From Octopus sinensis (taxonomy: Eukaryota), in NCBI RefSeq assembly GCF_006345805.1, contig NW_021834197.1, forward strand, positions 1-50,711: a stretch of 50,711 nt of DNA, read 5' to 3'. The notes under the pieces are model-generated. The model was not told the origin of the DNA. It worked only from the letters and a program-made list of their open reading frames with translations, and did not search any database. The stretch's first letter is position 1, and each line of letters begins with the position of its first letter. Positions 17,365 to 49,635 of the stretch are shown piece after piece. The translations under genes were made by a program, and so were the position numbers.

Positions 17365-17401
<37 letters not shown>

Positions 17402-17749: not shown

Positions 17750-17781
<32 letters not shown>

Positions 17782-18761: not shown

Positions 18762-18806
<45 letters not shown>

Positions 18807-18920: not shown

Positions 18921-19392
18921 TATTGATTATACATAGTAGTAACTAGCACACATTAACCTCAAATTGCTTATCCTCATACGTGTAATGAAAATAGTTATAC
19001 GCACGCACACGTGCACACACACATACACAAATACACACACACACACACCACACACACACACAACCCAGTATTTTACATGCTCTTCCGATCCATTCTTCCC
19101 TTCCAAAAAACCTAATCTTACTTTTCTCTCCAAAGTTTATAAAAGTCTTATGACGTCACACACGCAGAGATGCTGGCATTGTAATCGCATGCATCATTAT
19201 GGAATGTTTGTACCTGACGAGAAAAAAAAAATTGCACCTTGCATTCCAGCATATTTCTTGGCGCAATTTGTGCATAATTGAAGTTAATTGATCACTGCAT
19301 CTCAGCCTTGCTTGCGATTGCACTTCGCTACTGCACACATTCTTCATACTGCACTTAGCTACTTTATTGTTTTGCTGAAATTATACCTATAT

Positions 19393-19534
19393 GTGCTAAC
19401 CAACCACATGGTTCCGGGTTCAGTCCCACTGCGTGGCATCTTGGGCAAGTGTCTTCTGCTATAGCCCCGGGCCGACCAATGCCTTATGAGTGGATTTGGT
19501 AGACGGAAACTGAAAGAAGCCCGTCGTATATATG

Positions 19535-19569
<35 letters not shown>

Positions 19570-19772
19570 TTGTCCCCCTAGCATTGCCTGACAACCGATG
19601 CTGGTGTGTTTACGTCCCCGTCACTTAGCGGTTCGGCAAAAAGAGACCGATAGAATAAGTACTGGGCTTACAAAGAATAAGTCCCGGGGTCGATTTGCTC
19701 GACTTAAAGGCGGTGCTCCAGCATGGCCGCAGTCAAATGACTGAAACAAGTAAAAGAGTAAAGAGTATATAT
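19393..19772 (+). mobile_element. SINE-A, slightly 5'-truncated
   Basis: B-box, body and AAAAGAGT tail are present. Confidence 0.88.
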
Positions 19773-20029
19773 AATGTATATATATATGTATGCATGTGTG
19801 TTTAGTATAGTCAATAGTTTTGCATAGTGTGCAATGGTGTTATAAAACTGCAGTTGCGGTGCATGTGCATTTGTCTGGTATGACATATGCAGTGATGTTT
19901 ATTAAATGGATACAATGTGTGCAGCACAATGCATTGTTATGCATTCTGCTGTGCACTTGCATGCATACGTATGAATATGCATACATGCATGCATATATAA
20001 ATACATACCTATATGCACGTACATAAATC

Positions 20030-20480
20030 ACACGCATACACACACACACTCACATGTACACATACACACACACACTCATGTACACACATACGCACACACT
20101 CATGTACACACATACGCACACACACATGTACACACACACACACTCATGTACACACACACACACACACTCATGTACACACACACACACGCACACACACATG
20201 TACACACACACACTCATGTACATACACACGCACACACACACTCATGTACACACACACACGCACACACACACACGCACACACACACTCATGTACACACACA
20301 CGCACACACACACTCATGTACAACACACACACGCACACACACACACGCACACACACACACGCACACACACACTCATGTACACACACACACACACACACAC
20401 TCATGTACACACACACGCACACACACACTCATGTACACACACACGCACACACACACTCATGTACACACACACGCACACAC
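20030..20480. repeat. (CA)n minisatellite with recurring CTCATGTA core
   Basis: Read directly from the sequence. Confidence 0.9.
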
Positions 20481-20894
20481 ATCTTTGCATTTTGAGCATT
20501 CGCCCTTGTTTTAACTTTTAAGATTTTCACCTCCCCTTCCTCTACTCATTTCCTCTCCCTTCTCCATCTCTCCCTGTCTCTCTCTCTCTCTCTCTCACTT
20601 CTATCTTACTCTCTTCCTCTCACTTTACTACGACCACCACCACCACCATCAACTCTGATCCCTCCTCTTCCATCGCCACCACTAAAATCACAGCTGGCCG
20701 CCGTTTCATTGTTTCTTGCCGCCCCCTTCCGTTTGCGTTATACTTCCCCGACACCACCATCACAATAACAATACATCACCGCCACCGCCTCATCACAATA
20801 ACATTACCCCACCACCACCATCTAACAATATAACTACCACTACCACCACTATAACATTACCGCCTCTACCACCACTTCCAGAATCTAGGTTATG

Positions 20895-22859
20895 ATGATG
20901 TCATACTCCATATTTAGCTGTGAAACCCTGACAGCATGGAGTGTACAGGGTGCCAAAAGGGTTGCTAGAAAGAGCAACCAAATCTACTGCTGCTGGATCG
21001 GCGTGGTGGTATAGGAAGGGGTTCTTTGGGGGTCGGGTAGAGACAAATAACAACAAAGGCAGCAAGCAATAACAACAATTATTTCTGGAGCCAACAAGAT
21101 TGCTTGAAATAACAGCTAAATCTATAGAAATTGTTACATGAAGTCTGCTATTGGAGATCAGGGTTAAGCTAGGACTTCACAACAATGCTAACCAGAGGAG
21201 GCACTTGGTAGCTATGTACGTTAGAAATAGCAGCCAAATCACCGTTAGATTATTATAGGAGTTCCTTTACTGGATCAGGATGACCTAGGGTGGATCAACA
21301 ATAGCCTTGATATGTCAATAGGGGAGGTACATAGTGGCTACGTCAGCTAGAAATAGCAGCTAAATCTCTGTTGTATTATCATAGGTCTGCTTTGGAAAGT
21401 CATGCTTGAATAGCTGCTAAATCTCTGAATTGTCATAGAAGGCTTGCTACTGGATCATGACTGACCTGGGGTTAAACAACAACAACAACAATAATAACTA
21501 TCACAACTGATATAGCTACAGCTGGCCAACAAAGGATTCCGCTAAGTGATTGCTAGAAATAGCAGCAACATATCCGTCAAATAATGGTAAATCTGTTGGA
21601 TCAAGGCTGACTTGGAGTTAAATATTACAACTACAGAAGCTGTGATCTAAACAATGAGTACATTCTACGTGGTCGTTGTATATGCTAAAAATAGCAGCTA
21701 AATCTCACTGAAACCGCGTTAGCTTTCTGCCTTAATTTAGGAAAAGATTCCATCAGATGATGACGTCATTCCAAATACATTTAGCTCGATAAGGCGTTGT
21801 GGTCAGGGCTAGAAGGTCTTGTATCATAAGTTTGTTGTTTGTACTAATTTAAGGAAACCTAGGGTTAAATAACAATGACATACCAACAGCATACTCTTTT
21901 ACCCTTTTACTAGTTTCAGTCATTTGACTGCGGCCATGCTGGAGCACCGCCTTTAATCGAGCAACTCGACCCCGGGACTTATTCTTTTTGTAAGCCCAGT
22001 ACTTATTCTATCGGTCTACTTTTGCTGAACCGCTAAGTGACGGGGACATAAACACACCAGCATCGGTTGTCAAGCAATGCTAGGGGAACAAACACACTCA
22101 CACAAACACACACACGCATATATATATATATATATATATACACACAAATACACACACGCATATACATATATATATATACATATATATATCTAATATATAT
22201 ATAATAATATATATATATATATATATAAATACACACACAACCACACACACACATATATATATATACATATATATATATACATATATATGACGGGCTTCTT
22301 TCAGTTTCCGTCTACCAAATCCACTCACAAGGCTTTGGTCGGCCCGGGGCTATAGCAGAAGACACTTGCCCAAGATGCCACGCAGTGGGACTGAACCCGG
22401 AACCATGTGGTTGCTAAACAAGCTACTTACCTCACAGCCACTCCTATGCCTATATTAAACCACACACATACATATATATATATATACATATATACGACGG
22501 GCTTCTTTCAGTTTCCGTCTACCAAATCCACTCACAAGGCTTTGGTCGGCCCGAGGCTATAGCAGAAGACACTTGCCCAAGGTGCCACGCAGTGGGACTG
22601 AACCCGGAACCATGTGGTTGCTAAACAAGCTACTTACCACACAGCCACTCCTGCGCCTCAAGTTTCATATATAAAATTTTAAAAAAATTTGCTTTTAAGG
22701 CAGATCTTCCCACATTCTTCCAATGCCTTTTTTTTCTGTTCTTTTCTTTCTCCTGGTGAGGGTAAGATCTCACTCAATCTATGAAGCTATGTAAATACAA
22801 GGAGAACAACAGCAATTGTAGCATCATCCTGGAATGATGATGTCATGTGCTATATTTAG
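20895..22859. promoter_or_regulatory. Putative intronic CRE(-variant)/MEF2 enhancer modules
   Basis: TGATGTCA+CCATATTTAG (20896-20917), CTAAAAATAG (21685-21694) with ATGACGTCAT (21760-21769), and TGATGTCA+CTATATTTAG (22838-22859). Confidence 0.45.
21893..22658 (-). mobile_element. SINE-A full copy plus tandem extra head
   Basis: Full copy at 21893-22445 and second head at 22495-22658. Confidence 0.88.
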
Positions 22860-23029
22860 CTTTTATTTAAATCCAGGCGTAAACAATTAAATCACGGCTC
22901 TGCAGACTAGCTTAGAATTAATGAAGGCTTTTGATGCGTGTTATAGTGGTAGTCCTGAAGTTTAGCACGCGAAACCCTCTAAGCATTTGCTTTTAAAACA
23001 TAACCTATGGTACACTAATTAAGCCAACC

Positions 23030-23757
23030 TACTAGAAATAGCAGCCAAATCTCCCACAAATTACACCTTACCGTCTTGGGCCATGAGGGAAACCTCTAAG
23101 TGATAGATAAATCTGGAAGAAATAGCAGCCAAATCTCCCTCAAATTACACCTTTCCGTCTTATTAATGTTCATATGTGAAGGAAACCTCTAAGTGATAGA
23201 TAAATGTGGTAGAAATAGTAGCCAAAATCTCCCTCAAATTACACCTTACCGACTTATTAATGTTTGTGTGTATGAGCCAGTGAGGGAAACCTGTAAGTGA
23301 TAGATACATCTGGTAGAAATAGCAGCCAAATCTCCCTCAAATCACACCCTACTGTTTTATGTATGTATATATGAATGTATGAGCCAATGAGGGAGACCTC
23401 TACATGGTAGCTAAGCCTGGTAGAAATAGCAGCCAAATCTCCCTCAAATCACACCCTACTGTTTTATGTATGTATATATGAATGTATGAGCCAATGAGGG
23501 AGACCTCTACATGGTAGCTAGACCTGGTAGAAATAGCAACCAAATCACACCTTACAGTCGTATGCATGTATGTGTGTATGCATGTATGAGCCAATGAGGG
23601 AGACCTCTACATGGTAGCTAGACCTGGTAGAAATAGCAGCCAAATCTCCCTCAAATCACACCCTCCTGCCTTATGTATGTATATATATATAACGGGAAGC
23701 TTTATGAAAATAGACAAAAGACGAAGGCAGGTGGAAAACAAACGAACAATTGTATTA

Positions 23758-23817
<60 letters not shown>

Positions 23818-23900
23818 CATAAGCTAATGAGGGGTTTTTCTACATGGTAGCTAGGCCTGGTTGAAATAGCAGCCATGTAGAGGTCTCCTTCATTGGCTGG
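23030..23900. repeat. Tandem array of the same ~105-bp unit as 16507-17070, in reverse orientation (about 8 units)
   Basis: Recurring TAGAAATAGCAGCCAAATCTCCCTCAAAT(C/T)ACACC...GAGCCAATGAGGGAGACCTCTACATGG. Confidence 0.92.
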
Positions 23901-24390
23901 GATTTTCTTTGTTAAAGAAGGGTATTTAGAAAATCACCTAATTTAATTTTAGGTATATAAGACTCGAAAGGAGAGGAAAAAAAGTGGAACGGTCACGGCT
24001 AGAGCGCTTCTTTAATCAAGCTATGCTGGTGCCAAACAACTGCAGCGGCATCCAGCAATGATGTCATATAACATTAGATATTAAAATCTTAAAATAGATA
24101 ACCCCCCCTCCCCATCTCTGTGTAAGACGGAGCAACTAGGTACGACTTTCATTCACGTCATTCACACACCAACGCCTGTTTTTCCTGTTTTAAGAAGTAC
24201 ACTTTAGATTGATCTCTCGCTCTCTCTCCTTGGCATAAGCTGTTTGGAAACGGAAAACATATGTGCAACTGCAGATAGGTGTGTGTGTGGAAGTTGTATG
24301 TTTGAAATAATGACCTGCAAAACTAAATGCACTTGAGAGGAACGACTGAGATATGTACGGTGGAGAGCAAGTAACGAGGTGGCTTTTTAA

Positions 24391-24710
24391 CCCTTTAGTG
24401 TTCAGATTACTCTGTTAAATGTAATACTTTTTCACTCAAATTGAGTGTTCAGATTAGTGTTCAGATTTAGTGTTCAGATTACTCTGTTAAATGTAATACT
24501 TTTTCACTCAAATTGAGTGTTCAGATTAGTGTTCAGATTTAGTGTTCAGATTACTCTGTTAAATGTAATACTTTTTCACTCAAATTGTTTTGAATTAATC
24601 CTGGATCATCTTACAGCTTTGAGGTTTCAATGATCTGATTACTTATTTTTAGAATGGCATTGTAGGTTAGGTGTGAGAGGATAGACATCGCCAGTTTAAA
24701 CACTAAAGGG
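24391..24710. mobile_element. piggyBac-like MITE with internal tandem expansion
   Basis: TTAA at 24387-24390 and 24711-24714. Perfect 12-bp TIR CCCTTTAGTGTT / AACACTAAAGGG. CCC...GGG ends with TTAA are the piggyBac signature. Confidence 0.85.
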
Positions 24711-24799
24711 TTAAGTATATGGATAGTTGTCTTGGTGGCTTGGCAAGCGGGTAGCTAGATCGGTAGCTGGGTAGCTTGGTAAGTACATGGGTAGGTAGA

Positions 24800-25125
24800 T
24801 ATGTTTCTTTATTAGCCACACAGGGCTGCACGCAGACGGGACAAATTACAAGGTAGAGCTTTTCTTTTGGGAATAAAAAAGGGGGTTTGGTTTTCGATCA
24901 AAAGGGATCGTAAAAGGAAAGAAAGTGGAAAGCAAAAAAAAAAAGAGGGGGGATAAAAATAAAAGGAAAAGGGGAAAAAATGGATCAATAAGGATCGTTA
25001 TCACAGAAATGTCAATATAAAGTGTAAAGGAGAGGAGAGGTGAGGTTTACCCGTGGAAAGAAAAGCCCACGGAAAAGACCACGGTAACCTCGGTCAATGA
25101 AGTCACATGTTATTATTATTATTTT
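24800..25125 (-). mobile_element. Probable LINE 3' end sharing its tail with SINE-B
   Basis: The reverse complement ends CCTTGTAATTTGTCCCGTCTGCGTGCAGCCCTGTGTGGCTAATAAAGAAA. The SINE-B tail is CCTTGTTTGTCCCCTCTGTGTTTAGCCCCTTGTGGGCAATAAAGAAA. The upstream part is unrelated to SINE-B. Confidence 0.5.
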
Positions 25126-25721
25126 TTGCAAATAAGCAACTCTGTATTAATTTTTACGGTTCATAGGATCATAATCAAGGGGGCTTCGTCAGATAGATGG
25201 TTTGGTAAATAGATGGGTACATGACTAGTTGTCTTATGAATTAGTTTGGTACATTGGTAGCTGGGCAGTTTGGATACCAAGGTGGCTTGGTACAGAGATG
25301 AGTTGTTGGCTAAGCGACTTGGTGAGCAGGTGGGTTGGTGGCTAGGTTTCTTGGTCAATAGATGGGTAGACATCTTGATGGTTTGGTCGGTAGGTAGGTA
25401 AATTGCTTGGTAAATAGATGGACGGCTCGTTATCTAGCTAGCTTGTTGAGTTAGAGGTTAATCAGAGAGATAGGTAACTTGATGGATGCATGGAGTGGTA
25501 GCTAGGTGGGTAAGTAGATGATCAGTTAATTATGATTTTATTCAACATATCCTCCTCCAAGATTCTTACATTTATTGCAGCGGCCCCCTTCAATTTTTCT
25601 AAGCCCTTGTAAAAGAATTTGGAAGGTTGGGCTTCCAACCAGGTCTTTCGCGACACCCTTAAAGCCAGGAACCGTAGATAGATAGGTAGATGGATGGATG
25701 GATAGATATATAGATATATAT

Positions 25722-25915
25722 TTCTTTATTGCCCACAAGGGGCTAAACATAGAGGGGACAAACAAGGACAGACAAAGGGATTAAGTCGATTACATCGACC
25801 CCCTACCCAGTGCGAAACTGGTACTTTATTTATCGACCCCGAAAGGATGAAAGGTAAAGTCGACCTCGGCGGAATTTGAACTCAGAACGTAACGACAGAC
25901 GAAATACCGCTAAGA
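25722..25915 (-). mobile_element. SINE-B, head truncated
   Basis: Matches the family B body and tail. Confidence 0.88.
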
Positions 25916-26295
25916 TATATAGATAGATAGATACGGACGGACATTAAGAGAGCTGTAGGCGACTAAGGATTAAGGTTTAAATATTTTAAAATTCATTCTT
26001 AGATATATATCTTGACCGGACATAGCTTTTTTTATAACTCGTCATCTCCTGAAATTAGATAGATGTAGATAAGTAGTTAAGTGGTATGTAAGAGAGAGAA
26101 AACGGACTTTCGTAGAATTCCTGTCTGCCAAAATTCCATTCACAAAGTATTAGTCATCTCGAGACTGTAATCAGAGAAAGAACACTTGCCCCTCCACCAA
26201 CCCACCCAAGACTGCGCTCAAGGATCGCTTGAACCCGGCACCATTTTGTCGTGAATCAAGCTTCTTAACGACGTGTCCAGTTTGTCATTGGCTCC

Positions 26296-26337
<42 letters not shown>

Positions 26338-26499
26338 GTGTGTGTGTGTGTGGTGCCGAGGCGTGCGCCGGTCACACGTCTGACGCGAGCCGACACCGCG
26401 TCTACGTTTATCTGCTGACCCAGTTTCGAAACAGCAGCTGGCAAGACGTAGGATGCGTCATAGGTTAGGATGTGTGGCGGGGTGGATGGTTGAGGTAAG

Positions 26500-27370
26500 G
26501 TAAGATGGCTAGAAAAAGAAAGGTAGGTAGGTAGATAGATGTAGGCAGAGAGAAATAAATTGATAGATTGATAAAAGAAATAGGTAGTTATAGAGGTAGA
26601 TAGGTAAGTAGGTAGGTAGATAGATAGATAGACAGAGGTACAGAGAAAGATGGATAGATAGATAGAGGGTAGAGAGAAATAGGTAGATAGATAGATTGAG
26701 GGTAGAGGGAAATAGATAGATAAGCAGATAGAGAGAGAGGCATAGACAGAGGTACAGAGAAAGATGGATGGATAGATAGATAGAGGGTAGAGAGAAATAG
26801 GTAGATAGATAGATTGAGGGTAGAGGGAAATAGATAGATAGACAGATAGAGAGAGAGAGAGAGAGGCATAGACAGAGGTACAGAGAAAGATGGATAGATA
26901 GATAGAGGGTAGAGAGAAAGATGGATAGATAGATTGATAGAGGGTAGAGAGAAATAGATAGATAGATAGATAGATATGTGTGCATATATGAGAGAGAGAG
27001 AGAGAAATAGATAGATAGATAGATGGAGGGTAGAGAGAAATAGGTAGATAGATAGATTGATAGAGGGTAGAGAGAAATAGATAGAGGGTAGAGATAGATA
27101 GATAGAGGGTAGAGAGAAATAGATAGAGGGTAGAGAGAAATAGATAGATAGAGGGTAGAGAGAAATAGATAGATAGATAGAGGGTAGAGATAGATAGATA
27201 GAGGGTAGAGAGAAATAGATAGATAGAGGGTAGAGAGAAATAGATAGATAGATAGAGGGTAGAGAGAAGTAGGTAGAGAGAAATAGATTGATAGAGGGTA
27301 GAGAGAAATAGGTAGATAGATAGAGGGTAGAGAGAAATAGATAGATAGTGGGTGGAGAGGGATAGACATG
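26500..27370. repeat. (GATA)n/(GA)n compound minisatellite (GAGGGTAGAGAGAAATAGATAGATA-like units)
   Basis: Read directly from the sequence. Confidence 0.92.
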
Positions 27371-28190
27371 TAGTTAGGGTACCTATCTTAAGTTTTTTTC
27401 CATTGTTTAACCGTGGGTCACTTTTGATCACGTAAATCTGAGCTACCGTAACCGAACGTTTCAATGTGTCCATGTTTTGGGGGTTTATTTCTTATTTTTA
27501 TTTATATTTCATTACATTTAGGATGTAATTTGAGGAGGGAATGGTAATTGCTATTTCTAGCTAAGTCGGTCGTGAAACCAGGTAGAGGCGGGGGCTGCTT
27601 AGGTTTTGCGTATGTATGTGTGTGTAATTATGTATTTTTGCATTTGTATGAGCTGTGTATATATGCATGTATAGATGTGTGTAAATGTATATGTATACGT
27701 GTAAACGTGTATATATTTATATTCATGTTCGTGCATATGTCCGTCTGTCTACCTGTCTCTCTGTCTATGTATATACACGCACACGTAATTAATTGATTTT
27801 GTCGAGCTTAATAAAAGCAATTTAACATAAAACTGAATGATCATTCGATACTTTTTGTTGAGTACATATCTATTATATACCTTTACAAGGATTGTGTTGA
27901 CGGAGACTTAATCAGAAACCTGGAAAGTCCTTGAGACCGAAGGTTCCAGAAAATCGATGTAATTCCCGTGTGTATGCGCGGGCGCGCATGTGTTCATAGC
28001 TGTTTATTCATCAAACAGGATAATCTAAGTGTATATAATATATAAAACGACACAAATTCATAAACTAGAATGTTTGTATAACTTTATTGTATCTACGAAG
28101 CAATACCAGATACTCAATGACCAAGATATTCGTACAAATGTATTTGTGAAACAACACACATATAATATAATCTTCCGTTTCTATTTGCAG

Positions 28191-28370
28191 GGGGTTTACG
28201 GGAATTCAAGTCAAAACACGAAAATCTATGCGACAATTTACTATGGATGCCGTCAGAATGTCGTTTGTTATCGTCAGAGTGTCGTATAGTACACAGTCCT
28301 TTGACGCCATTAGTTGAACATCAAATCGAAGCAGCCGAGGTTTCACGAATATTGCCTTTTCTCTATTTAG
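28191..28370 (+). CDS. DUSP10: DUSP10 coding exon 2 (180 nt, phase 1-1): end of rhodanese domain, linker, start of catalytic domain
   Basis: Acceptor TTTGCAG| at 28190 and donor TTAG|GTGAGA at 28370. Reads (G)GLREFKSKHENLCDN...IEAAEVSRILPFLYL(G), in frame with exon 1. Human DUSP10 has LKGGLSSFKQNHENLCDN...IENAELTPILPFLFLG. Not in the ORF track because it has no in-frame start long enough. Confidence 0.95.
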
Positions 28371-29565
28371 GTGAGAACCGTTTTTTATAATCATTTAGAA
28401 TATTATCATTCACCATCCATTGTTTGTCATCAATCATCAATCAAATTTTAGACCTAATTTTGTGTTTCGTTTTGAGATTTTTCCCTTCTCCACCCCGTCC
28501 TTGCTTGGTTTGGACGATGTCTTGCCTCTCCAGCACTGCCGCCATGTTGTTGTCTTTTGTGACTATCGTCACTATCATTTCTCCATGCCTTCCTCTGCCA
28601 TATATATGGCCCATCTTTTATTCAGATATTGTGTATCTAGGACTACATCATCTAATGTGCCCTTGCTATTGTTTAGCTCCAAATTAATCCTGATCTTGTA
28701 CGCCAATTATGAAAATTACTCCAGCTGTTAGCTTCCTGTCTTTTATTTAGATATGGTGTACCTAGCACAACCTTATCTTTCCTCCCTATTGTAAGACTCC
28801 TGTTCAGCCTTGATCCAATACACCAGTGATCAATGGACAATCCAGCTGACACCATGTTTTTTCTTCATTCGGTCATAGTGTATCTAGGACTACATTATCT
28901 AATATGTTCTTTGTTCTTCAACCCCTAGTTTGAGGGTTATGTCATCTAATATGTCCTGGTTGATACTTTTTAGCAAGTAGAACAAACCACATGGGACCTT
29001 CCTTAATTTCGTTGGGCAGTGGTTCTAAATAGGGAGATTACAGTCTTGAGATGACTAATATATCGTGAATGGAATTTTGGCAGACAGGAATTCTATGAAA
29101 GTCCGTTTTCTCTCTCTTACATACCACTTAGCTACTTATCTACAAACCACATCGGGCCTTCCTTAATTTTATTGGGCAGTGATTCTAAATAGTGGGGGAT
29201 ACAATGTTTTCAGGGTCTACATGAATAAAAGGGGACATTTGTAAGGTCACTAAAGTTTCTGAGGAGACCACAGATGTTTTTTTAGGGGTCACGCACAACT
29301 TTAACTGCCAGACAAGCATACAATCACCTTTTAAAGTGTCATACAAATAAAATGGGATGTTTGTAGTGTCACTGACGTTTTATTTCTCTGGGGTTCATGT
29401 TTCAGAGGAGAACGCAGAAGTTTTTGAAGGGGTCATAGACAGCTTTAACTTCTAGATCGACAGCATCAATCTTTATAGGGTTCACATTGTCAGAACTTTC
29501 AATTTAAAACAAAAATCTAGGCCTTGTACCTATAGTAAAAAGGATTGTTATTATTATTATTATTA

Positions 29566-30164
29566 AGGTGCTGGAGAAAAGAATTCAAGCATTTCATCTG
29601 TCTTTATGTTCTGAATTCAAATTCCACCGAGGTTGACTTTGCCTTTCATCCTTTTCGGGCTCAATAAAATAAGGACCAGTTGAGCACTGGGAGTCAATGT
29701 AATCAATTTAACCCAACTCCCCTGAAATTGCAGTCCTTGTCCCAAAATTGGAAATATTATCATTATTAACAAGGTGGTGAGCTGGCAGAACCGTTAGCAC
29801 ACTGGGCGAAATACTTAGCGGTATTTCACTCGTCGCTCTGTTCAACTTTGCGTTCGTCCATTTGGAGTCGATAAATTAAGTAAGTACCAGTTGAGTACTA
29901 GAGTCAATTCAACTGACCAGTCGCCTCCCAACCAAATTTCAGGCCTTGTGCCTTTAGTAGAAAGGATTATTATTATTATTGCATTTTATCTATCATCTAT
30001 CTTTACATTCTGAGTTCAAATTCCACCATGCCCCACCATGCTCAGTTTTGCCTTTCGTCTTTTCGGGGTCGATAAATTAAGTACCAGTTGAGTTCTGGGG
30101 TCAATGTAATCGACTTACCTCCTCCCCAAAATTGCTGCCCTCGTGGCAAAATTTGTAACCATTA

Positions 30165-30208
<44 letters not shown>
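29566..30208 (+). mobile_element. Three stacked degenerate SINE-B-related copies, each ending in an (ATT)n tail
   Basis: Copies at about 29566-29770, 29771-29980 and 29981-30208, sharing the GTCGATAAATTAAGTACCAG-like core. Confidence 0.75.
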
Positions 30209-30212
30209 TCAG

Positions 30213-30398
30213 GTAACGAGCGAGATGCTGGTAATTTACAAATTCTGAAAGAGTTAGATATAACTTATATTTTAAATGTCACGTCACATGTTCGACCCCA
30301 TTTCGAGAGTCAAGGCATTCATTACAAAACGATACCAGTAACGGACAGCGGTCACCAAAATCTACGGAAGTACTTTGATGATGCCATAGAATATATAG
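30213..30398 (+). CDS. DUSP10: DUSP10 coding exon 3 (186 nt, phase 1-1): DSP catalytic domain N-half with general-acid Asp
   Basis: Acceptor TTTCAG| at 30212 and donor ATAG|GTAAAT at 30398. Reads (G)NERDAGNLQILKELDITYILNVTSHVRPHFESQGIHYKTIPVTDSGHQNLRKYFDDAIEYI. Asp284 lies in PVTDS. Confidence 0.95.
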
Positions 30399-30777
30399 GT
30401 AAATATCAATCTATTTGTATGTCTGTAACCATCTGTGCATCATACTTGATTACATACATGTTTGAAAGGCAAATTTATTGTGATATTTGTCCAGAAATAA
30501 CATCTCTTATGGGTGTTCTGTGTTGAAAAGCACAATGTATATTGTGGGCAGATGAAAATTTTCTCACTTGCTGTTGCTGGGGCGATTTTTGACCCCTTTC
30601 ATATATATATTGTGTTTTTAGGCACAGCATGTTCACGAGATGTTATCTCTGGACAAGTGGTGCTGTAAATTTGCCTTTCAACTGTGTATTTATGTAAAGT
30701 TGATACATACGTAGATGGCTGTTTTCACCTAATGCTCCTTTTATTATGCATAACTAATCTATCTATGAAATATAAGT

Positions 30778-31160
30778 GTAAGAGTGACTGTGTGGTAAGA
30801 AGCTTGCTTCCCAACCACATGATTCCGGGTTCAGTCCCACTGCATGGCACCTTGGGCAAGTGTCGTCTACTATAGCCTCAGGCTGACAAAAACCTTGTGT
30901 GTTTGGTAGACAGAAACTGAAAGAAGCCCATCATACATGTATGTGTGTGTGCGCACACGCACATCTGTATTTGTGCCCCCATCACTGCTTGGCAACATAT
31001 GTTGGTATGTTTACATCCCTGTGACTTAGCGGTTCAGCAAAAGACAATGACAATAAGTACTAGGCTTTAAAAATAGGTTCTGGGGTTGATTTGTTTGACT
31101 AAAATTCTTCAAGGTGGCGCCTCCAGCATGAGGTCACAGTCAAATGAATGAAATAAATAA
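30778..31160 (+). mobile_element. Degenerate SINE-A
   Basis: Head, CCTTGGGCAAG and tail are recognisable. Confidence 0.75.
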
Positions 31161-32121
31161 GATATATGACTCCACTTCTTAATGTGTGTGTGTGTGTGTG
31201 TATATATATAAATATATATATATATATATGGTCCAGGGGGAAATGTTTTGAGAAGTAGGAAGGCATTCCGCATGAAATAAGGTTTTACATATGCAATGAT
31301 AATGAGCTGAGAACTGATTATCCTTGCAATTAGTAGGTACATACTCCCTCCATGGGTGTTTAAAATCTCAAAACAAACAACAACCAAAGAGATAAATGCT
31401 CAACAGTCAGTTGAAATGTTTGGACTATATATATATATGTATATATATGTATATATATAACAATGTAGACTGGAGTGGGTCAAATGAAAGGAAAGCAACT
31501 GGATGTGTTTCAGCCTTGTTATAACTCATCAGTGAAATCTATTTGGTCTCAGTTTGCAGTACTGACAGTAATCAGTGCACACACACACGTGTGTGTATAC
31601 ATGTGCATGAATATATATGTGTATTTATTAATATGCATACGTGTGTGTGTGTATATATATGCATACGTGTATATATATGCATACGTGTATATATATGCAT
31701 ACGTGTATATATATGCATACATGTATATATATATATGCATACGTGTATATATGTATATGTGCATGTGTGTATATATGCATATATTGCATGTGTGTATATA
31801 TATATATGCATACGTATATGTATATATGTGCTTGTGTGTATATATATATATATATATTTGTGCATGTGTGTATATGCATGTGTATATATGTGCATGTGTG
31901 TGTGTGTATCATCATCATCATCATCATCGTTTAACGTCCGCTTTCCATGCTAGCATGGGTTGGACGCTTCAACTGGGGTCTGTGTATATATATATATGCA
32001 TGTGTATATGTGTGTGTGTGCATGCATGCATATATACGTCGCGTGCACACCTTTATTTTTTCATTTCCAGCTTCTAGAATTTTTCTTTTCATATTTATTC
32101 CTCTATTCTTCATACTTTCTT

Positions 32122-32144
32122 CGTCTTTTCTTTGTCTCCCTCTT

Positions 32145-32176
<32 letters not shown>

Positions 32177-32535
32177 TTCTCATCACTGATTGACGTACAC
32201 ACACATACACACACACACACACACATACACATACGTACGCGCGCACACTCACGCACGCCCAGACGGACGCACGCATGCGAGCTCGCACTCTCACTCTCAC
32301 TCACGGGCTTTAACGTTCGCTTCACTCAACAGCCCCGTCTTTTCTTTGTCTCCCTCTCTCCCCCTCTCTCTTTCTTATCACTGATGGACGTACACACACA
32401 CACACACACCACACACACACACAGACACACACACGTACGCACGCCCAGACGGACGGACGCACGCACGCACGCGAGCTCGCACTCTCACTCTCACTCAACG
32501 GGCTTTAAAACGTTCGCTTCACTCAAACATCCCCC
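32122..32535. repeat. Tandem duplication of a ~210-bp CT/CA/CpG-rich unit
   Basis: Units start at about 32122 and 32336. Confidence 0.85.
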
Positions 32536-32911
32536 GAACACACAGACACACAACACAACTCACAACACGCTTCGACTCCGACTCCGACTGCTGAAAGCCG
32601 AAGCGGCGGCGGCGGTGGGAGGAGGAGGAGGAGGAGGGAAAGTGAGGGAGAAGGAAAGCAAACAACCAAATCGGCTGGAAAAACAGAGGACGTTCACCTT
32701 GTACTAATAGGCATAGCGTAGTGGCGGTGGCGGTGGTGGCGGTGGGAGTACTAGAAATGGTAGTGGTGATGGTGTGAGGGGGGGGGTAAGTGAAGTCAGT
32801 CGCTGCTGCTGATGCCGCCGTCGCTGAGAGAACTTTTCTGACTTAATGACTCATCGACGCATGCACCCCCCCCCCTCGCCATCTCCTTTTTCTCTCCGTT
32901 AGTAAAGCATA

Positions 32912-33332
32912 TACTCTTTTACTCTTTTACTTGTATCAGTCATTTGACTGCGGCCATGCTGGAGCACCGCCTTTTTTAATCGAGCAAATCGACCCCGGGA
33001 CTTATTCTTTTTGTAAGCCCAGTACTTATTCTATCGGTCTACTTTTGCCGAACCGCTAAGTAACGGGGACGCAAACACACCAGCATCGGTTGTCAAGCAA
33101 TGCTAGGGGGACAAACACAGACACACAAACATATACACACACATACACATATATATATACATATACACGACAGGCTTCTTTCAGTTTCCGTCTACCAAAT
33201 CCACTCACAAGGCATTGGTCGGCCAGGGGCTATAGTAGAAGACACTTGCCCAAGATGCCACGCAGTGGGACTGAACCCGGAACCATGTGGTTGGTAAGCA
33301 AGCTACTTACCACACAGCCACTCCTGCGCCTA
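32912..33332 (-). mobile_element. SINE-A full length
   Basis: Matches the family consensus. Confidence 0.9.
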
Positions 33333-33347
33333 TATAGAATTTTATTC

Positions 33348-33761
33348 GGATCTTTTCGGTTTGAACGGCAGTTTTTTAAAATAATTTCCACGTAACCAAA
33401 CACTTTTAAACTTAGTATACTGGTAGAATGTGTTTATAAAACATCTTTTTTCTCTTGGCTTTATTGAGGAAATTCTATAGTTTGTAAGATATTTGTTGTT
33501 TTTTTCTTCAATTTCTGCAATTTCAACCAACCAATGACGTCTATTGAGGTAAAAAAAAAACATTCTGTGCCGTATGAATATGTCCCTCGTTTAAGAAACA
33601 GATTGGGTTTATTTACATTTGTGAAGAAAAAAGATACCCTTCCCCCACCCCTAACCCTAACATAGATTGAAATGCAATAGATCGATACTAGGGTCATAAT
33701 TATGGGTAACAATTTCATATGACACCGCTAGAAAAAACTGCCAGTCAAACCGAAAAGATCC
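33348..33761. mobile_element. Unclassified MITE with 30-bp TIRs
   Basis: GGATCTTTTCGGTTTGAACGGCAGTTTTTT ... AAAAAACTGCCAGTCAAACCGAAAAGATCC (28/30 complementary). No clear TSD. Confidence 0.75.
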
Positions 33762-35133
33762 CTTAATTCTATCGGTTTCTTTTACCAAGCCTGTAAGTTG
33801 CGGGGACGTAAACACACCAACATCGGTTTTTAGCAATGATGGTGGGGACAAACACAGACACACAAATACATAAGAATATATATGTACTAGCAGTATCGCC
33901 TGGCGTTGCTCGGGTTTGTTTCGACCCTTTAGAATTGGAAACACAGACACACAAATTCAGCTAAAATTCTTTGAAGATGGTGCTCCAGTATGGCCACAGT
34001 CTGACTGAGACAAGTAAAAGAAAAAATAGAAATATAAGAACTTATTAAACAAGGTGATTCATCCAGGGTACAAATTGTCTTTCATGGAAGTTTCTGTGGG
34101 TGCAGTCCTGGGGTCAGCTGTTTGGTTCACAAGGAGCTTGACTGACCCTTGACCTGTCTGGCTTTTAGTCCTCCATGGTGACCACAATATCCATCTCACC
34201 TGGTAAGCCAGAGGTGGGTGCAGTTTGATCGCTGACCACCCAACCATGAAATGGATGGTTCCTGGCTTAGATAGGGGTCAGTATCAGGGTTTTTCTCACC
34301 TGACCCTTATTGTGCTCGCAAGCTGGAGTCAGCACCCCCCCGAGTGGTGTGGCTTAGCAGAATGGTCATAATTGGATTGTTTTGTTGTTTTTTTTTTGAT
34401 CAAAGGTCTGCTCCAGTTGTGCTAACCATGGGCTAAACAACAGCAGCAGCGATGCTATCATTATCGCTCCTAGAATGACCCACCTCTACTGCCCACCCCC
34501 ACTTCAGCCCCATCTTCGCCACTGCCACCACCACTGTAGACACATAGGGACTTTGGAGATGAGGGAGGGGGTGTAATTTCCTCTGTACCCCCCCCCCCGT
34601 TCCATCCCACCCATCCCCCCAGACACTTTCCTTTCTATCCCTTTTTTTTTCTCTTCTGGCAATCTTAAAAAGGAGGCATGAGTCACACAGGATGACGGGG
34701 GGGGGGGGGGGGGGCTATGGACAATTTAGCTTATGGGGTGGGGGGCGATGGGGGGTGAATGAGGTTCACATGGTGGAGTGGTAATGATGGCGGCGGTGGT
34801 GGTGGTGGTGGGTGAGTGAGGTGGTCTGATGTGAGTAGATGGTGACTGGGGGGATAGGGGTAGATGAGTCCCCCCCCCTTGTTTAAAATGGCTGGGGGCG
34901 ATGAGTGACGAATAAAAAGGGGGCAAAGAAACATTTTATGCCTGTGTGTGTATGTGTACATATATATCCTTTTATTCTTATGCTTGTTTCAGTTGGCAGA
35001 CTGCGGCCATGCTGGGGCACCCCCTTGAAGAGTTTTGGTCCAACGAATTGAATCGACCCCAAGACTTTCTTTCCCTTTTTCTTTTTTACAAGTAGCACTT
35101 ATTTTATCAGTCTCTTTTGCCTGACTGCTAAGT

Positions 35134-35389
35134 TACGTAATGGCAGACGAAATACCTATTTCTTTACTACCCACAAGGGGCTAAACACAGAGGGGACAAA
35201 CAAGGACAGACAAACGGATTAAGTCGATTACATCAACCCCAGTGCGCAACTGGTACTTAATTTATCGACCCCGAAAGGATGAAAGGCAAAGTTGACCTCG
35301 GCGGAATTTGAACTCAGAACGTAGCGGCAGACGAAATACTGCTAAGCATTTTGCTCGGCATGCTAACATTTCTGCCAGCTCACCGCCTT
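35134..35389 (-). mobile_element. SINE-B with run-on start of a second body
   Basis: Has the same GAAATACC|TATTTCTTT junction as the 5858 multimer. Confidence 0.85.
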
Positions 35390-35461
35390 CCAGTCAAACC
35401 CTCTAACCCATGCCAGCATGGAAAGCAGATGTTAAATGATTTTTTTTTTTTTTTTTTTTTT

Positions 35462-35853
35462 TTTACTTGTTTCAGTCATTTGACTGCGGCCATGCTGGAG
35501 CACCGCCTTTAATCAAGCAACTCGACCCCGGGACTTATTCTTTGTAAGCCCAGTACTTATTCTATCGGTCTCTTGTGCCGAACCGCTAAGTGACGGGGAC
35601 ATAAATACACCAGCATCGGTTGTCAAGCAATGCTAGGGGGACAAACGCAAGCATATACACACACATATATATATATATATATACATATATACGACGGGCT
35701 TCTTTCAGTTTCCGTCTACCAAATCCACTCACAAGGCTTTGGTCGGCCCGAGGCTATAATAGAAGACACTTGCCCAAGGTGCCACACAGTGGGACTGAAC
35801 CCGGAACCATGTGGTTGGTAAACAAACTACTTACCACACAGCCACTCCTGCGC
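35462..35853 (-). mobile_element. SINE-A full length, about 110 bp upstream of the exon 4 acceptor
   Basis: Matches the family consensus. Confidence 0.9.
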
Positions 35854-35966
35854 CCTGATGATGATATTTTTCTTGAAGTTTGTAAATTTCTTATGATGTC
35901 AACAACAAAAAATTCTGTTCATTTTATCTTAGATTTTAATTTTCTTTTCCTTTTGTTTATTTGCAG

Positions 35967-36241
35967 ATGAGGCCAAACGAAACGGCGCCAAGATCTTAAT
36001 CCATTGTCAAGCTGGGGTATCACGGTCGGCAACGGTGACCATCGCATATTTATTGAAACACTCCACCCTCAGTATGACAGATGCTTACCGATACGTAAAG
36101 CAGAAGCGTGCCATCATTTCGCCGAATTTTAACTTCATGGGACAACTTATGGAGTTTGAACAATCCTTAAACAACGGACTCTCGCCTCGAATCCATGAGA
36201 AATCCCGAGAAGAGTTTGATGAGATTGACCGCTGGTTATAG
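35967..36241 (+). CDS. DUSP10: DUSP10 coding exon 4: active-site P-loop and C-terminus, stop TAG
   Basis: Polypyrimidine tract plus TTGCAG| at 35966. Reads (D)[31 protein letters not shown]...[27 protein letters not shown]...RWL*. Catalytic Cys315 codon at 36005-36007, 31 residues after Asp284. Spliced CDS is 538+180+186+275=1179 nt, i.e. 392 aa. Confidence 0.96.
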
Positions 36242-44934: not shown

Positions 44935-44984
<50 letters not shown>

Positions 44985-47997: not shown

Positions 47998-48181
47998 CCA
48001 CCACCACCACCACCACCACCACCATCACCATCACTATTACCACTACCTCCACCACCGCCTCCAACACTACCACCACTACCAACAACAAACAAAACCATCA
48101 CCACTGCTATCATCACCATCATTGCGAATCCCACCATGACCACCACGACCAACACTGCCACCACCACCACCACCACCACTA

Positions 48182-48212
<31 letters not shown>

Positions 48213-48845
48213 AACCATCACCACCAACACCACCACCACCACCACCACCACCACTACTACTACAACCATCATCACAACCACCACCACTACCATCTCTACC
48301 ACAACCACTGCTGCTACCATAACGACTATTACTACTACAAGTACTCCAACCACCACCACCACCACACCACCACCACCACCATCACCACCACCACCGCCGC
48401 CACTGCTGCTGCTACTACTACTACTGCTGCTACCAGCTCCACCACCATCACTACCATCATCATTTATACCATCACCACAACTACTATCTTCACACAAAAC
48501 CATTGCTGTTGTACATGGTGGTGGTGGTGGTGGTGGTGGTGGTGACAGTGGTGGTGTTGATGGTGGTGGTGGTGGTGGTGGTGACAGTGGTGGTGTTGAT
48601 GGTGGTGGTGGTGGTGGTGACAGTGGTGGTGTTGATGGTGGTGGTGGTGGTGGTGGTGACAGTGGTGGTGTTGATGGTGGTGGTGGTGGTGATGGTGGTG
48701 GTATTGGTGGTGGTTTCATTAGTAGTTGTGGTCATGGTGACGATGGAGGCGGTGGTGATATCCATGGCAGTGGCAATTATGATGGTGATGGCAATGATGA
48801 TGGTGGTGGTGGTGGTGGTGGTGGTGGTGGTGGTGGCGGAGGTGG
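47998..48845. repeat. (ACC/ACT)n block followed by (GGT/GAT)n block
   Basis: Read directly from the sequence. Includes a ~35-bp GGTGGT...GACAGTGGTGGTGTTGAT tandem at 48517-48690. Confidence 0.9.
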
Positions 48846-48887
48846 GGGGGGAGGGCTGTTGTTTTTTGCCCCCAGGAAAGTCCTTTG

Positions 48888-48980
48888 GTCATGTGACATG
48901 AAATTTTGACTGAACCAGCTTTGTGCCGTGACTCATCCGTGACGTCATTGTTACACCACTGCCAGCGCCCCCTAGCGGCT
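48888..48980. promoter_or_regulatory. Compact module: M-box, AP-1, CRE and CTCF motif
   Basis: GTCATGTGAC at 48888-48897, TGACTCA at 48929-48935, TGACGTCA at 48940-48947, and minus-strand CCGCTAGGGGGCGC at 48965-48978. Confidence 0.6.
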
Positions 48981-49099
48981 GTATAATGGCTGAACGATCT
49001 AGGTGAGCACACGCTTGTGTATGTATATGTGTGTGTGTGTCTATTGCGCACACACATACACATACACACACTCACTATACAAGTATACATACGTGTCAG

Positions 49100-49146
<47 letters not shown>

Positions 49147-49458
49147 AATTGTTTGTATATATACATATATGTATAAGCGTGTACATATACATAGTATGTA
49201 TATGTATGTGTACATATATATATAAATATACATATATATGTACATATATATATATGATATGTATGTATGTATACACACACACACACATATTCATATGCAC
49301 TTACATAGATAGATATCCAGAAACAAAGACAGACAGACTGAAAGATATACACACATCTACATACTTACATATACATATACATACAATATATATGTACATA
49401 TATATATATATATTATATATATATATATATATACATACATAGATCAATATATGCATAT

Positions 49459-49492
<34 letters not shown>

Positions 49493-49584
49493 GAATACAT
49501 ATACACACATATATATATATACATCATTACACCTAACATACATACATACACATACATACATATACATACATATACTATACATAT

Positions 49585-49629
<45 letters not shown>

Positions 49630-49635
<6 letters not shown>

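What the first reader, a model, noticed from the sequence alone, without database searches (positions are those of the whole stretch)
48888..48980. Near-consensus CTCF site packed with AP-1, CRE and M-box in under 100 bp
The minus strand CAGCCGCTAGGGGGCGCTG matches the CTCF core CC[AG][CG][CT]AG[AG][GT]GGC[AG][CG] at all 14 positions. A perfect AP-1 site and a perfect palindromic CRE lie 4 bp apart, and GTCATGTGAC (MITF/TFE-type) is 30 bp away. The CTCF motif points back toward DUSP10, 12.7 kb upstream. It is a candidate boundary/loop anchor combined with a stress-responsive enhancer, in an animal group where CTCF sites are little characterised.
Basis: partly seen in the sequence, partly recalled or inferred. 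Interest (0 to 1): 0.7.

Follow-up and report, generated by a model that had tools for sequence, protein, structure and literature searches.

The report
Octopus CTCF/bZIP motif island near DUSP10
A 160-base single-copy stretch downstream of the octopus DUSP10 gene really does carry a very strong CTCF-type motif next to paired AP-1/CRE sites, and a second octopus species keeps it, but it is an untested candidate regulatory element that also looks like a small exon.

Summary
The motifs are present at the stated coordinates. The window is a whole 50,711-bp unplaced scaffold of Octopus sinensis, and the DUSP10 stop codon lies 12.6 kb upstream of the island.

The CTCF-type match is the outlier. It is the only regex match in the window (expected 0.01). 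It scores 19.6 bits on a CTCF matrix I recalled from memory, against 12.5 bits for the next best site.

The AP-1 and CRE sites are not independent. They are one 11/12-bp tandem duplication (CCGTGACTCAT|CCGTGACGTCAT). The M-box match alone is at chance level.

The island is single-copy. It sits between microsatellites and is present at the syntenic place in O. bimaculoides. There the bZIP pair and M-box are intact, and the CTCF motif is weakened by a C→T change but still the best site in that locus at 16.1 bits. Conservation is real but unexceptional, in the top 8-13% of alignable windows.

No forward-strand CTCF partner exists in the window, so a loop to the DUSP10 promoter has no sequence support.

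The island is framed by a strong splice acceptor (48875|48876) and donor (49002|49003). The only other such pair in the window is the true DUSP10 exon 2.

Best reading: a candidate regulatory module, possibly promoter-proximal or exonic. Binding, target and transcription are untested.

The parts
48853..49014 (.). Single-copy island between microsatellites. The O. bimaculoides ortholog is at L002 39498-39658, which is CM046630.1 about 6,956,912-6,957,072, 6.2 kb 3' of the DUSP10 stop.
   Evidence: Unique in the window. 93.8% identical over 162 nt to L002. No other copy in L001, L002 or L004.
48963..48981 (-). CTCF-type site CAGCCGCTAGGGGGCGCTG. The 14-nt core is at 48965-48978.
   Evidence: Only regex match in the window, expected 0.01. 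19.6 bits against 12.5 for the next best site. p 1.4e-7 to 2.8e-8 per site. O. bimaculoides has G48967 to A, which is GGC to GGT on the motif strand, and scores 16.1 bits.
48926..48948 (+). Tandem duplication CCGTGACTCAT | CCGTGACGTCAT, which creates the AP-1 and CRE sites.
   Evidence: Read directly. Identical in O. bimaculoides.
48929..48935 (+). AP-1/TRE site TGACTCA.
   Evidence: 9 in the window against 8.3 expected. Conserved.
48940..48947 (+). Full palindromic CRE TGACGTCA.
   Evidence: 3 in the window against 0.73 expected. Conserved.
48888..48897 (+). M-box / E-box-type GTCATGTGAC. It is part of the 13-nt palindrome TCATGTGACATGA in O. sinensis.
   Evidence: 1 against 0.77 expected. 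The core is conserved, and the 3' flank becomes GTGACGTAA in O. bimaculoides.
48875..48883 (+). NF-kB-like GGAAAGTCC (9 of 10 positions of the classic kB site). Not conserved.
   Evidence: Read. It is GGAAAATCC in O. bimaculoides.
48856..48875 (+). Splice-acceptor-like signal: a pyrimidine tract followed by CAG|G. The exon-like segment would start at 48876.
   Evidence: Conserved in O. bimaculoides.
48876..49002 (+). Exon-like 127-nt segment. All three frames hit a stop within 35 nt. The ATG at 48986 sits in ATAATGG context and is open for 17 nt up to the donor.
   Evidence: With the strict filter, the only acceptor-donor pairs in the window are the true DUSP10 exon 2 and this segment. Shuffles give 0.07 pairs per window. 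The same pair is present in L002 at 39520-39646.
48982..48987 (+). TATA-like TATAAT, 35 bp 3' of the CRE. It overlaps the ATG at 48986-48988.
   Evidence: Read. Conserved.
49001..49008 (+). Splice-donor-like AG|GTGAGC.
   Evidence: Conserved.
47998..48845 (.). Left flank: a (CCA)n tract followed by a (TGG)n tract, which together form imperfect inverted arms.
   Evidence: The same arrangement is in O. bimaculoides at L002 39006-39498.
49015..49633 (.). Right flank: TG/TA microsatellites.
   Evidence: Sub-threshold Rfam mir-297/466-type hits here are repeat artefacts.
12035..36241 (+). DUSP10 coding span, the nearest gene. Exon 1 is 12035-12572, exon 2 is 28191-28370, exon 3 is near 30.2-30.4 kb, and the last exon runs from about 35960 to 36241.

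Best explanation
The island is a compact, single-copy cis-regulatory module.

Its parts are:
- a high-affinity-looking CTCF-type zinc-finger site on the minus strand;
- 17 bp away, a tandemly duplicated bZIP site pair (TRE plus full CRE);
- 31 bp 5' of that pair, an MITF/TFE/USF-type E-box.

Proposed mechanism (inferred): AP-1/ATF/CREB-family dimers, activated through JNK/p38/PKA-type signalling, bind the duplicated GTGAC-core sites and drive transcription. CTCF bound next to them tethers or delimits the element.

Two uses are compatible with the sequence and cannot be separated here:
(a) a distal feedback enhancer for DUSP10, a JNK/p38 phosphatase and the only gene within reach;
(b) the promoter-proximal region and short 5' exon of an unannotated plus-strand transcript. 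This reading rests on the CRE 35 bp upstream of a TATA-like box, an ATG in Kozak context and strong conserved splice signals.

Shown: the motifs are present and rare, the island is single-copy, and a congener retains it at the syntenic site. Inferred: protein binding, signal responsiveness, the target gene and any architectural role.

Rough split of my belief:
- some regulatory function, about 0.5-0.55;
- within that, CTCF actually bound, about 0.25-0.3 overall;
- acting as a loop anchor or boundary for DUSP10, about 0.1.
For: - CTCF match: the only one in 50.7 kb, expected 0.01. It scores 19.6 bits against 12.5 for the next best site, with p of 1.4e-7 to 2.8e-8 per site.
- A full CRE lies 17 bp away. 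The window has 3 CREs against 0.73 expected.
- On a 45-motif panel the island is the top 100-bp window, 15.0 against a shuffle maximum of 9.45.
- It is single-copy in the window and in 108 kb of other cephalopod sequence.
- Its translation finds nothing in the protein collections, so it is not coding or from an ORF-bearing repeat.
- It is not a known or stably folded RNA.
- The orthologous island in O. bimaculoides lies at the same place relative to DUSP10 and the same microsatellites. A 48-nt perfect block covers AP-1 and CRE, the M-box core is intact, and the CTCF site is still the best in that 43-kb locus at 16.1 bits.
- The splice-signal pair is otherwise seen only at the true DUSP10 exon 2.
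- Literature: cephalopods have CTCF and cohesin. CCCTC-like motifs are enriched at E. scolopes TAD boundaries (PMC9023564), and CTCF-like motifs occur at coleoid loop anchors (PMC13652810).
- From my own general knowledge: MAPK phosphatases are commonly induced by the pathways they switch off.
Against: - There are no occupancy, accessibility or expression data.
- Conservation is not exceptional: 96.1% for 127 columns puts it in the top 7.7% of windows, and 93.75% for 160 columns in the top 13%, against 91.2% ungapped identity over the aligned syntenic chain (coding exons included). The 48-nt perfect run is about rank 35 in 20 kb.
- One of the 7 substitutions hits a high-information CTCF position.
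- AP-1 and M-box are at chance frequency on their own, and AP-1 and CRE are one duplication event.
- Without CTCF and the double-counted CRE half-site, by my rough estimate's totals (not a separate run), the motif-panel score falls inside the shuffle range.
- CpG observed/expected is 0.64-0.77, no higher than the window's 0.62, so there is no CpG-island signature.
- There is no forward CTCF partner in the window.
- Roughly 85-775 equally good CTCF matches are expected by chance per 2.7-Gb genome.
- In cuttlefish loop anchors the HOMER CTCF motif is only 0.37% against 0.29% of background windows (I assigned this sheet to S. officinalis from the sheet order seen).
- No homolog was found within 10 kb 3' of DUSP10 in a distant cephalopod.
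- No protein-coding gene is called at or within 3.6 kb beyond the island in O. bimaculoides.
Confidence: 0.45

Rival explanations
1. The island is an unannotated internal or 5'-UTR exon of a plus-strand transcript. That transcript could be a lncRNA, a 5' exon of a gene beyond the scaffold end, or a DUSP10-linked poison or alternative exon. On this reading the transcription-factor motifs are incidental or secondary.
For: - A pyrimidine tract with CAG|G at 48875/48876 and TAG|GTGAGC at 49002/49003 lie 127 nt apart. Both are conserved in O. bimaculoides.
- With the strict filter, the only acceptor-donor pairs in the three octopus loci (138 kb) are the true DUSP10 exon 2 and this island, on the same strand. 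L001 stops short of the island. Shuffles give 0.07 pairs per window, and 13 of 200 shuffles have any.
- The ATG at 48986 in ATAATGG context is open to the donor and conserved.
Against: - All three frames hit a stop within 35 nt of the acceptor.
- The 5 codons after the ATG change from MAERS to MAEQP; both substitutions in them are non-synonymous.
- No protein-coding gene is called over the island in O. bimaculoides. In O. vulgaris none is called within 10 kb 3' of DUSP10, though that locus stops short of the island.
- An exon-only reading leaves a CTCF match at about p 1e-7 next to a full CRE unexplained.
- No transcript data could be consulted.
Confidence: 0.2
2. The cluster is a chance coincidence in neutrally evolving unique DNA. 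A small GC-richer remnant between microsatellites happens to match several short consensus motifs, and a reader who could choose among many motifs picked it out after the fact.
For: - AP-1 and M-box occur at chance frequency, and AP-1 and CRE are one duplication.
- Conservation is within the upper range of ordinary intronic and intergenic DNA at 91% neutral identity.
- Substitutions do not significantly avoid the motif cores: 1 of 7 falls in a core, against about 2.3 expected.
- There is no CpG-island signature.
- 85-775 chance CTCF matches of this quality are expected per genome.
- The first-stage scan looks at many windows.
Against: - The joint occurrence of a CTCF match of 19.6 bits or more (0.003-0.015 per window) and a full CRE within 50 bp (about 0.002-0.003) comes to about 1e-5 per window before correcting for post hoc choice (my own rough product).
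- An independent strong splice-signal pair frames the same 127 nt (0.07 per window anywhere).
- The island tops the 45-motif panel, beyond all 60 shuffles.
Confidence: 0.28
3. The island is a fragment of a transposable element or other dispersed repeat that spreads CTCF sites, as SINE B2 does in mouse.
For: The surrounding 46-48 kb is packed with SINE-like repeats that occur about ten times in the window. Repeat-borne CTCF sites are known in mammals; this is from my own knowledge.
Against: - There is no second copy in the window, in 87 kb of two other Octopus loci or in L004.
- No ORF-called relatives exist among 5.8 billion or 1.84 billion proteins.
- The island has no terminal repeats.
- A low-copy family cannot be excluded without a whole genome.
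Confidence: 0.04
4. The island encodes a small structured RNA, such as a miRNA, snoRNA or other ncRNA gene.
For: None specific. The idea was considered because CTGAAC occurs twice and the island contains small palindromes.
Against: - Rfam gives no hit at gathering threshold anywhere in the window.
- No sub-threshold hit falls within the island; all of those are in the TG/TA repeat at 49008 and beyond.
- Folding z-scores are -0.13 on the plus strand and -0.52 on the minus strand.
Confidence: 0.02

Closest known systems
Vertebrate and insect CTCF binding sites (core CCASYAGRKGGCRSY; insulators and loop anchors)
   Same: The 14-nt core matches at every position, and the extended 19-mer scores 19.6 of 26 bits. 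The match also fits the shorter insect-type YAGRKGGCGC core. A minus-strand motif faces the gene on its left, as a right-hand anchor would.
   Different: - No occupancy data exist.
- There is no convergent partner motif within 49 kb.
- The strict core is broken in the congener.
- Cephalopods have no CTCF ChIP data and only weak motif enrichment at anchors, and their reported loops are far larger than this locus.
CRE/TATA promoters and immediate-early-type bZIP enhancers (CREB/ATF and AP-1 targets such as the c-fos or DUSP1 regulatory regions; from my own knowledge)
   Same: A full palindromic CRE lies next to a TRE and about 35 bp upstream of a TATA-like box, with an E-box nearby. The neighbouring gene is a MAPK phosphatase, a class typically under feedback induction.
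   Different: No transcription start site is known here. The island lies 12.6 kb 3' of DUSP10, not at its promoter. It has no CpG-island character, and signal responsiveness is untested.
Short non-coding or 5'-UTR cassette exons
   Same: A canonical pyrimidine tract with CAG|G and an AG|GTGAG donor lie 127 nt apart and are conserved in a congener. The filter that finds them otherwise finds only a real DUSP10 exon.
   Different: There is no open frame through the segment, no annotated gene and no transcript evidence available.

Membership tests
CTCF binding site / insulator-loop anchor | Match to the CTCF core motif well above chance | tested here: met
   The regex matches 14 of 14 positions and is unique in the window, with 0.01 expected. 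The score is 19.6 bits, p 1.4e-7 to 2.8e-8. The matrix was recalled from memory.
CTCF binding site / insulator-loop anchor | Motif retained in related species | tested here: inconclusive
   O. bimaculoides has CCGCTAGGGGGTGC. It fails the strict regex at the GGC cytosine but still scores 16.1 bits, the top site in L002. O. vulgaris could not be reached, and a distant cephalopod had no homolog within 10 kb.
CTCF binding site / insulator-loop anchor | Convergent partner motif on the other side of the proposed loop (towards DUSP10) | tested here: not met
   The best plus-strand score anywhere in the window is 7.8 bits. The second-best site overall is also on the minus strand (20717, 12.5 bits). 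A partner beyond the scaffold cannot be excluded.
CTCF binding site / insulator-loop anchor | CTCF/cohesin occupancy and insulation or a loop in contact maps | not testable with these tools
   No ChIP, CUT&Tag or contact data are available here. The supplements of the coleoid Micro-C paper that are held as text did not contain DUSP10 or the chromosome accession.
bZIP (CRE/TRE)-responsive enhancer or promoter | Full-site CRE and/or TRE, conserved | tested here: met
   TGACGTCA and TGACTCA are present and identical in O. bimaculoides within a 48-nt perfect block.
bZIP (CRE/TRE)-responsive enhancer or promoter | Position near a transcription start or TATA box (typical of cAMP-responsive CREs; from my own knowledge) | tested here: inconclusive
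   A conserved TATAAT lies 35 bp 3' of the CRE, but no start site or annotated gene is known.
bZIP (CRE/TRE)-responsive enhancer or promoter | Open chromatin, factor binding, inducible activity | not testable with these tools
   This needs ATAC-seq, CUT&Tag or reporter assays.
Spliced exon | Canonical 3' and 5' splice signals at exon-like spacing, conserved | tested here: met
   the strict filter finds only the true DUSP10 exon 2 and this island, and shuffles give 0.07 pairs per window. The signals are conserved in L002.
Spliced exon | Open reading frame or conserved coding potential | tested here: not met
   All three frames hit a stop within 35 nt. The 5 codons after the ATG at 48986 carry 2 non-synonymous changes. 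The translation has no protein relatives.
Spliced exon | Transcript evidence (spliced reads) | not testable with these tools
   No RNA-seq is accessible. No protein-coding gene is called over the island in O. bimaculoides.
Repeat-borne CTCF site (SINE/TE-derived) | Multiple dispersed copies | tested here: not met
   The island is single-copy in the window and has only the ortholog in L002. L001 and L004 have none. The sample is only about 158 kb.
Known structured RNA family | Covariance-model match or a fold more stable than shuffled sequence | tested here: not met

The most novel reading that the evidence does not exclude
The island is a true octopus CTCF-bound element fused to a bZIP-responsive module and a spliced exon. 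It would act as a right-hand anchor or tether that couples JNK/p38/CREB signalling to feedback induction of DUSP10. That would be an example of vertebrate-style, orientation-dependent CTCF action at the 10-40 kb scale in a spiralian, where direct evidence for CTCF function is so far missing.
Probability: 0.08. Interest if true: 0.6.

Novelty: new member of a known kind. Interest (0 to 1): 0.27.

Why it matters
If the site is bound, it gives a concrete, sequence-defined and conserved locus for asking whether cephalopod CTCF recognises the vertebrate-type motif and whether it works directionally. Spiralian 3D-genome reviews list this as open (PMC10658181). The short fragment would also be a convenient reporter for AP-1/CREB signalling in octopus. 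If it is not bound, it is one of the few hundred chance matches expected per genome and has no wider meaning. A single site cannot settle the general question either way.

Tried and rejected
1. Coding or repeat origin. The island's only fully open frame found no candidate in the 5.8-billion-protein word search and nothing in the HMMER scan of 1.84 billion representatives.
2. Known RNA. Rfam found nothing at gathering threshold and nothing in the island with the E-value scan. The mir-297/466-type sub-threshold hits at 49008 and beyond are TG/TA-repeat artefacts. Folding z-scores are near zero.
3. Dispersed repeat. A self-BLAST and BLAST against L001, L002 and L004 gave only the ortholog.
4. Wider occurrence. 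Exact scans of a 21-mer and a 25-mer in the metagenome and viral collections returned 0. This was expected, because those collections hold little cephalopod DNA.
5. O. vulgaris ortholog. The locus (L001, OX597843.1) ends about 2.7 kb short of the island because of the 10-kb flank limit, and no other anchor protein was available.
6. Deep conservation. A decapodiform-like contig (ENA ERZ21867824 ctg118109l, L004) has no island homolog and no CTCF match within 10 kb 3' of DUSP10. This is inconclusive, because nothing in that flank aligns at all.
7. CpG island. CpG observed/expected is no higher than the window average.
8. Published Micro-C loops. The supplements held as text did not mention DUSP10 or CM046630.
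9. tRNA origin of the neighbouring SINE-like repeats. ARAGORN finds none, so I make no such claim.

Full report
**What the window is.** Searching with the DUSP10-like exons retrieves Octopus DUSP10. The O. sinensis protein XP_029656707.1 is recorded on a contig of exactly 50,711 bp, so the window is a whole unplaced O. sinensis scaffold. DUSP10 lies on the plus strand, with its ATG at 12035 and its stop at 36239-36241. Exon 1 is 12035-12572, exon 2 is 28191-28370, exon 3 is near 30.2-30.4 kb and the last exon is about 35960-36241. The finding lies 12.65 kb 3' of the stop and 1.7 kb from the scaffold end.

| Motif | Coordinates | In window | Expected |
|---|---|---|---|
| CTCF regex (minus strand) | 48965-48978 | 1 | 0.01 |
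| Full CRE TGACGTCA | 48940-48947 | 3 | 0.73 |
| AP-1 TGACTCA | 48929-48935 | 9 | 8.3 |
| M-box TCATGTGAC | 48889-48897 | 1 | 0.77 |

AP-1 and the M-box are therefore unremarkable on their own.

I scored the site with a 19-position CTCF matrix recalled from memory (JASPAR MA0139.1, so approximate). CAGCCGCTAGGGGGCGCTG scores 19.6 of a possible 26.0 bits. The next best site in the window scores 12.5 bits (20717, also minus strand) and the best plus-strand site scores 7.8 bits. The exact tail probability is 1.4e-7 per site with a uniform background and 2.8e-8 with the window's composition. That gives 0.003-0.015 expected per window, and about 85-775 chance sites per 2.7-Gb genome.

On a fixed panel of 45 classical motifs, the island is the top 100-bp window of the scaffold. 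It scores 15.0, against a shuffle maximum of 9.45 and a mean of 7.06. By my rough estimate's totals (not a separate run), the score falls inside the shuffle range without CTCF and the duplicate.

The 'perfect AP-1' and 'perfect CRE' are the two units of a tandem duplication, CCGTGACTCAT | CCGTGACGTCAT (48926-48948). They are one event, not two independent matches.

**What it is not.**
- It is not a dispersed repeat at the scale I could test. There is no second copy in the window, and only the ortholog appears in 87 kb of two other Octopus loci and 20 kb of a distant cephalopod.
- It is not coding. The only fully open frame has no relatives among 5.8 billion clustered proteins or 1.84 billion representatives.
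- It is not a known or stably folded RNA. Rfam finds nothing at gathering threshold. Sub-threshold hits are all in the TG/TA repeat. Folding z-scores are -0.13 and -0.52.
- It is not a CpG island. CpG observed/expected is 0.64-0.77, against 0.62 for the window.

**Conservation.**
- The O. vulgaris locus (L001) stops about 2.7 kb short of the island because of the flank limit.
- The O. bimaculoides locus (L002, CM046630.1) contains the island at 39498-39658. That is 6.2 kb 3' of the DUSP10 stop, between the same kinds of microsatellite, at 93.8% identity over 162 nt.
- Seven substitutions fall in 48876-49002. None touches the AP-1, CRE or M-box cores, and a 48-nt perfect block covers the bZIP pair.
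- One substitution (G48967 to A) turns the CTCF GGC into GGT. The strict regex then fails, but the site still scores 16.1 bits, by far the best in that 43-kb locus.
- The NF-kB-like GGAAAGTCC is lost. The M-box flank becomes GTGACGTAA, a third bZIP-like half-site.
- Set against the syntenic chain (19,056 ungapped aligned columns, 91.2% identity), the island is in the top 7.7% of 127-column windows and the top 13% of 160-column windows. Its perfect run is about the 35th longest. Conservation is real but not beyond what ordinary unique intronic or 3'-UTR DNA shows at this divergence.
- A decapodiform-like contig (L004) shows no homolog and no CTCF match within 10 kb 3' of DUSP10. Nothing aligns in that flank at all, so this is uninformative.

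The island is framed by a pyrimidine tract with CAG|G (exon-like start at 48876) and by TAG|GTGAGC (exon-like end at 49002), 127 nt apart on the DUSP10 strand.
- I applied a strict filter: at least 13 of 16 pyrimidines followed by YAG|G, then AG|GTRAG, at 50-300 nt spacing. The only pairs in the window are the true DUSP10 exon 2 and this island.
- The same two pairs are the only ones in O. bimaculoides. O. vulgaris, whose locus does not reach the island, has only exon 2.
- Dinucleotide shuffles give 0.07 pairs per window, and 13 of 200 shuffles have any.
- All three frames hit a stop within 35 nt, so the segment cannot be an internal coding exon.
- The ATG at 48986 sits in ATAATGG context and is open for 17 nt up to the donor. 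The five codons after it differ between species (MAERS against MAEQP), and no protein-coding gene is called there in O. bimaculoides.

**How it most likely works.** Two independent and individually improbable signals fall on the same 127-160 nt: the CTCF plus CRE motif cluster and the splice-signal pair. Pure chance therefore seems less likely to me than function, although neither signal is proof.

My best reading (confidence about 0.45) is a compact cis-regulatory module. AP-1/ATF/CREB-type dimers would bind the duplicated GTGAC-core sites, an MITF/TFE/USF-type factor the E-box, and CTCF the adjacent site. It could serve as a distal feedback enhancer for DUSP10, a JNK/p38 phosphatase and the only gene called within 10 kb either side of DUSP10 in O. 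vulgaris and O. bimaculoides. Alternatively it could be the promoter-proximal region and short 5' exon of an unannotated plus-strand transcript. Only motif presence, rarity, copy number and retention are shown. Binding, responsiveness and target are inferred.

The specific claim of a loop to the DUSP10 promoter gets no support from sequence, because the window has no forward-oriented partner.

The literature says that cephalopods have CTCF and cohesin, and that a CCCTC-like motif is enriched at E. scolopes TAD boundaries (PMC9023564). CTCF-like motifs are also detected at coleoid loop anchors (PMC13652810). In the one HOMER table I could read, the enrichment is small: 0.37% of anchor windows against 0.29% of background windows (I assigned this sheet to S. 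officinalis from the order of sheets seen). Reviews state that direct evidence for loop extrusion in spiralians is lacking (PMC10658181). A motif alone is therefore a weak predictor of an anchor.

**Rivals.**
- Exon only, about 0.2. This explains the splice signals but not the CTCF/CRE cluster.
- Chance, about 0.28. This fits the ordinary conservation, the chance-level AP-1 and M-box, and the fact that many windows are scanned.
- TE-borne site, about 0.04.
- Structured RNA, about 0.02.

**Verdict.** This is a new instance of known kinds of element. Interest is modest until occupancy, accessibility or transcript data are examined.

Noticed in passing
window 47998-48403 and 48516-48845: A (CCA)n tract of about 400 bp is followed by a (TGG)n tract of about 330 bp. 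Together they form imperfect inverted arms (about 200 nt, 71-77% complementary) directly abutting the island. The same CCA-then-TGG arrangement is present in O. bimaculoides (L002 39006-39498). It might form hairpins or cruciforms or be a fragile site, and it contains a 39-bp minisatellite at 48522-48697.
   Followed up: partly
window 21685-21768 (DUSP10 intron 1): A perfect MEF2 site, CTAAAAATAG (21685), lies 66 bp from a full CRE (21761). This is the second-highest window in the 45-motif panel (10.0, above all shuffles). The MEF2 site is conserved in O. vulgaris and O. bimaculoides, and the CRE is TGACGTAA in O. bimaculoides. It is a candidate activity-dependent intronic enhancer.
   Followed up: partly
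window 19105-19365 (DUSP10 intron 1): A third full CRE (19151) is preceded by TTTATAAAAG about 10 bp upstream. It is conserved in both O. vulgaris and O. bimaculoides, inside a block that is 97% and 86-88% identical respectively.
   Followed up: partly
window 20717-20735, minus strand: The second-best CTCF-like match in the window, CAAACGGAAGGGGGCGGCA (12.5 bits), has the same orientation as the island site. It lies in DUSP10 intron 1 next to a CA-rich repeat.
   Followed up: no
window, e.g. 3728-4162, 4659-5312, 8095-8729, 19394-19767, 32909-33341, 35461-35854, 44712-45154, 47200-47813: A SINE-like repeat family of about 300-400 bp occurs about ten times in the scaffold, and many times in the O. 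vulgaris locus, at 85-94% identity. ARAGORN finds no tRNA-like gene in any copy.
   Followed up: partly
window 43339-43723: A tandem array with a period of about 39 bp shows up as periodic ORF translations on both strands (…SGQKYSACFMFKLA… and …NIKQAEYFWPD…).
   Followed up: no
window 36242-39804 vs L002 33296-36626: About 3.5 kb directly after the DUSP10 stop aligns continuously with O. bimaculoides at 85-90% identity and contains many long perfect runs (up to 106 nt at 38645). It is probably a long conserved 3' UTR.
   Followed up: no
window 49008-49148: Sub-threshold Rfam hits to mir-297, mir-466 and mir-3149 (E down to 2e-6, far below gathering scores) fall entirely in the TG/TA microsatellite. 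They are repeat artefacts, not miRNA genes.
   Followed up: yes
whole window vs L001/L002: Unique non-coding DNA of this O. sinensis scaffold is about 97-98% identical to O. vulgaris and about 91% identical to O. bimaculoides. Insertions of SINE-like repeats and microsatellites roughly double the DUSP10-to-island distance in O. sinensis (12.6 kb) compared with O. bimaculoides (6.2 kb).
   Followed up: partly
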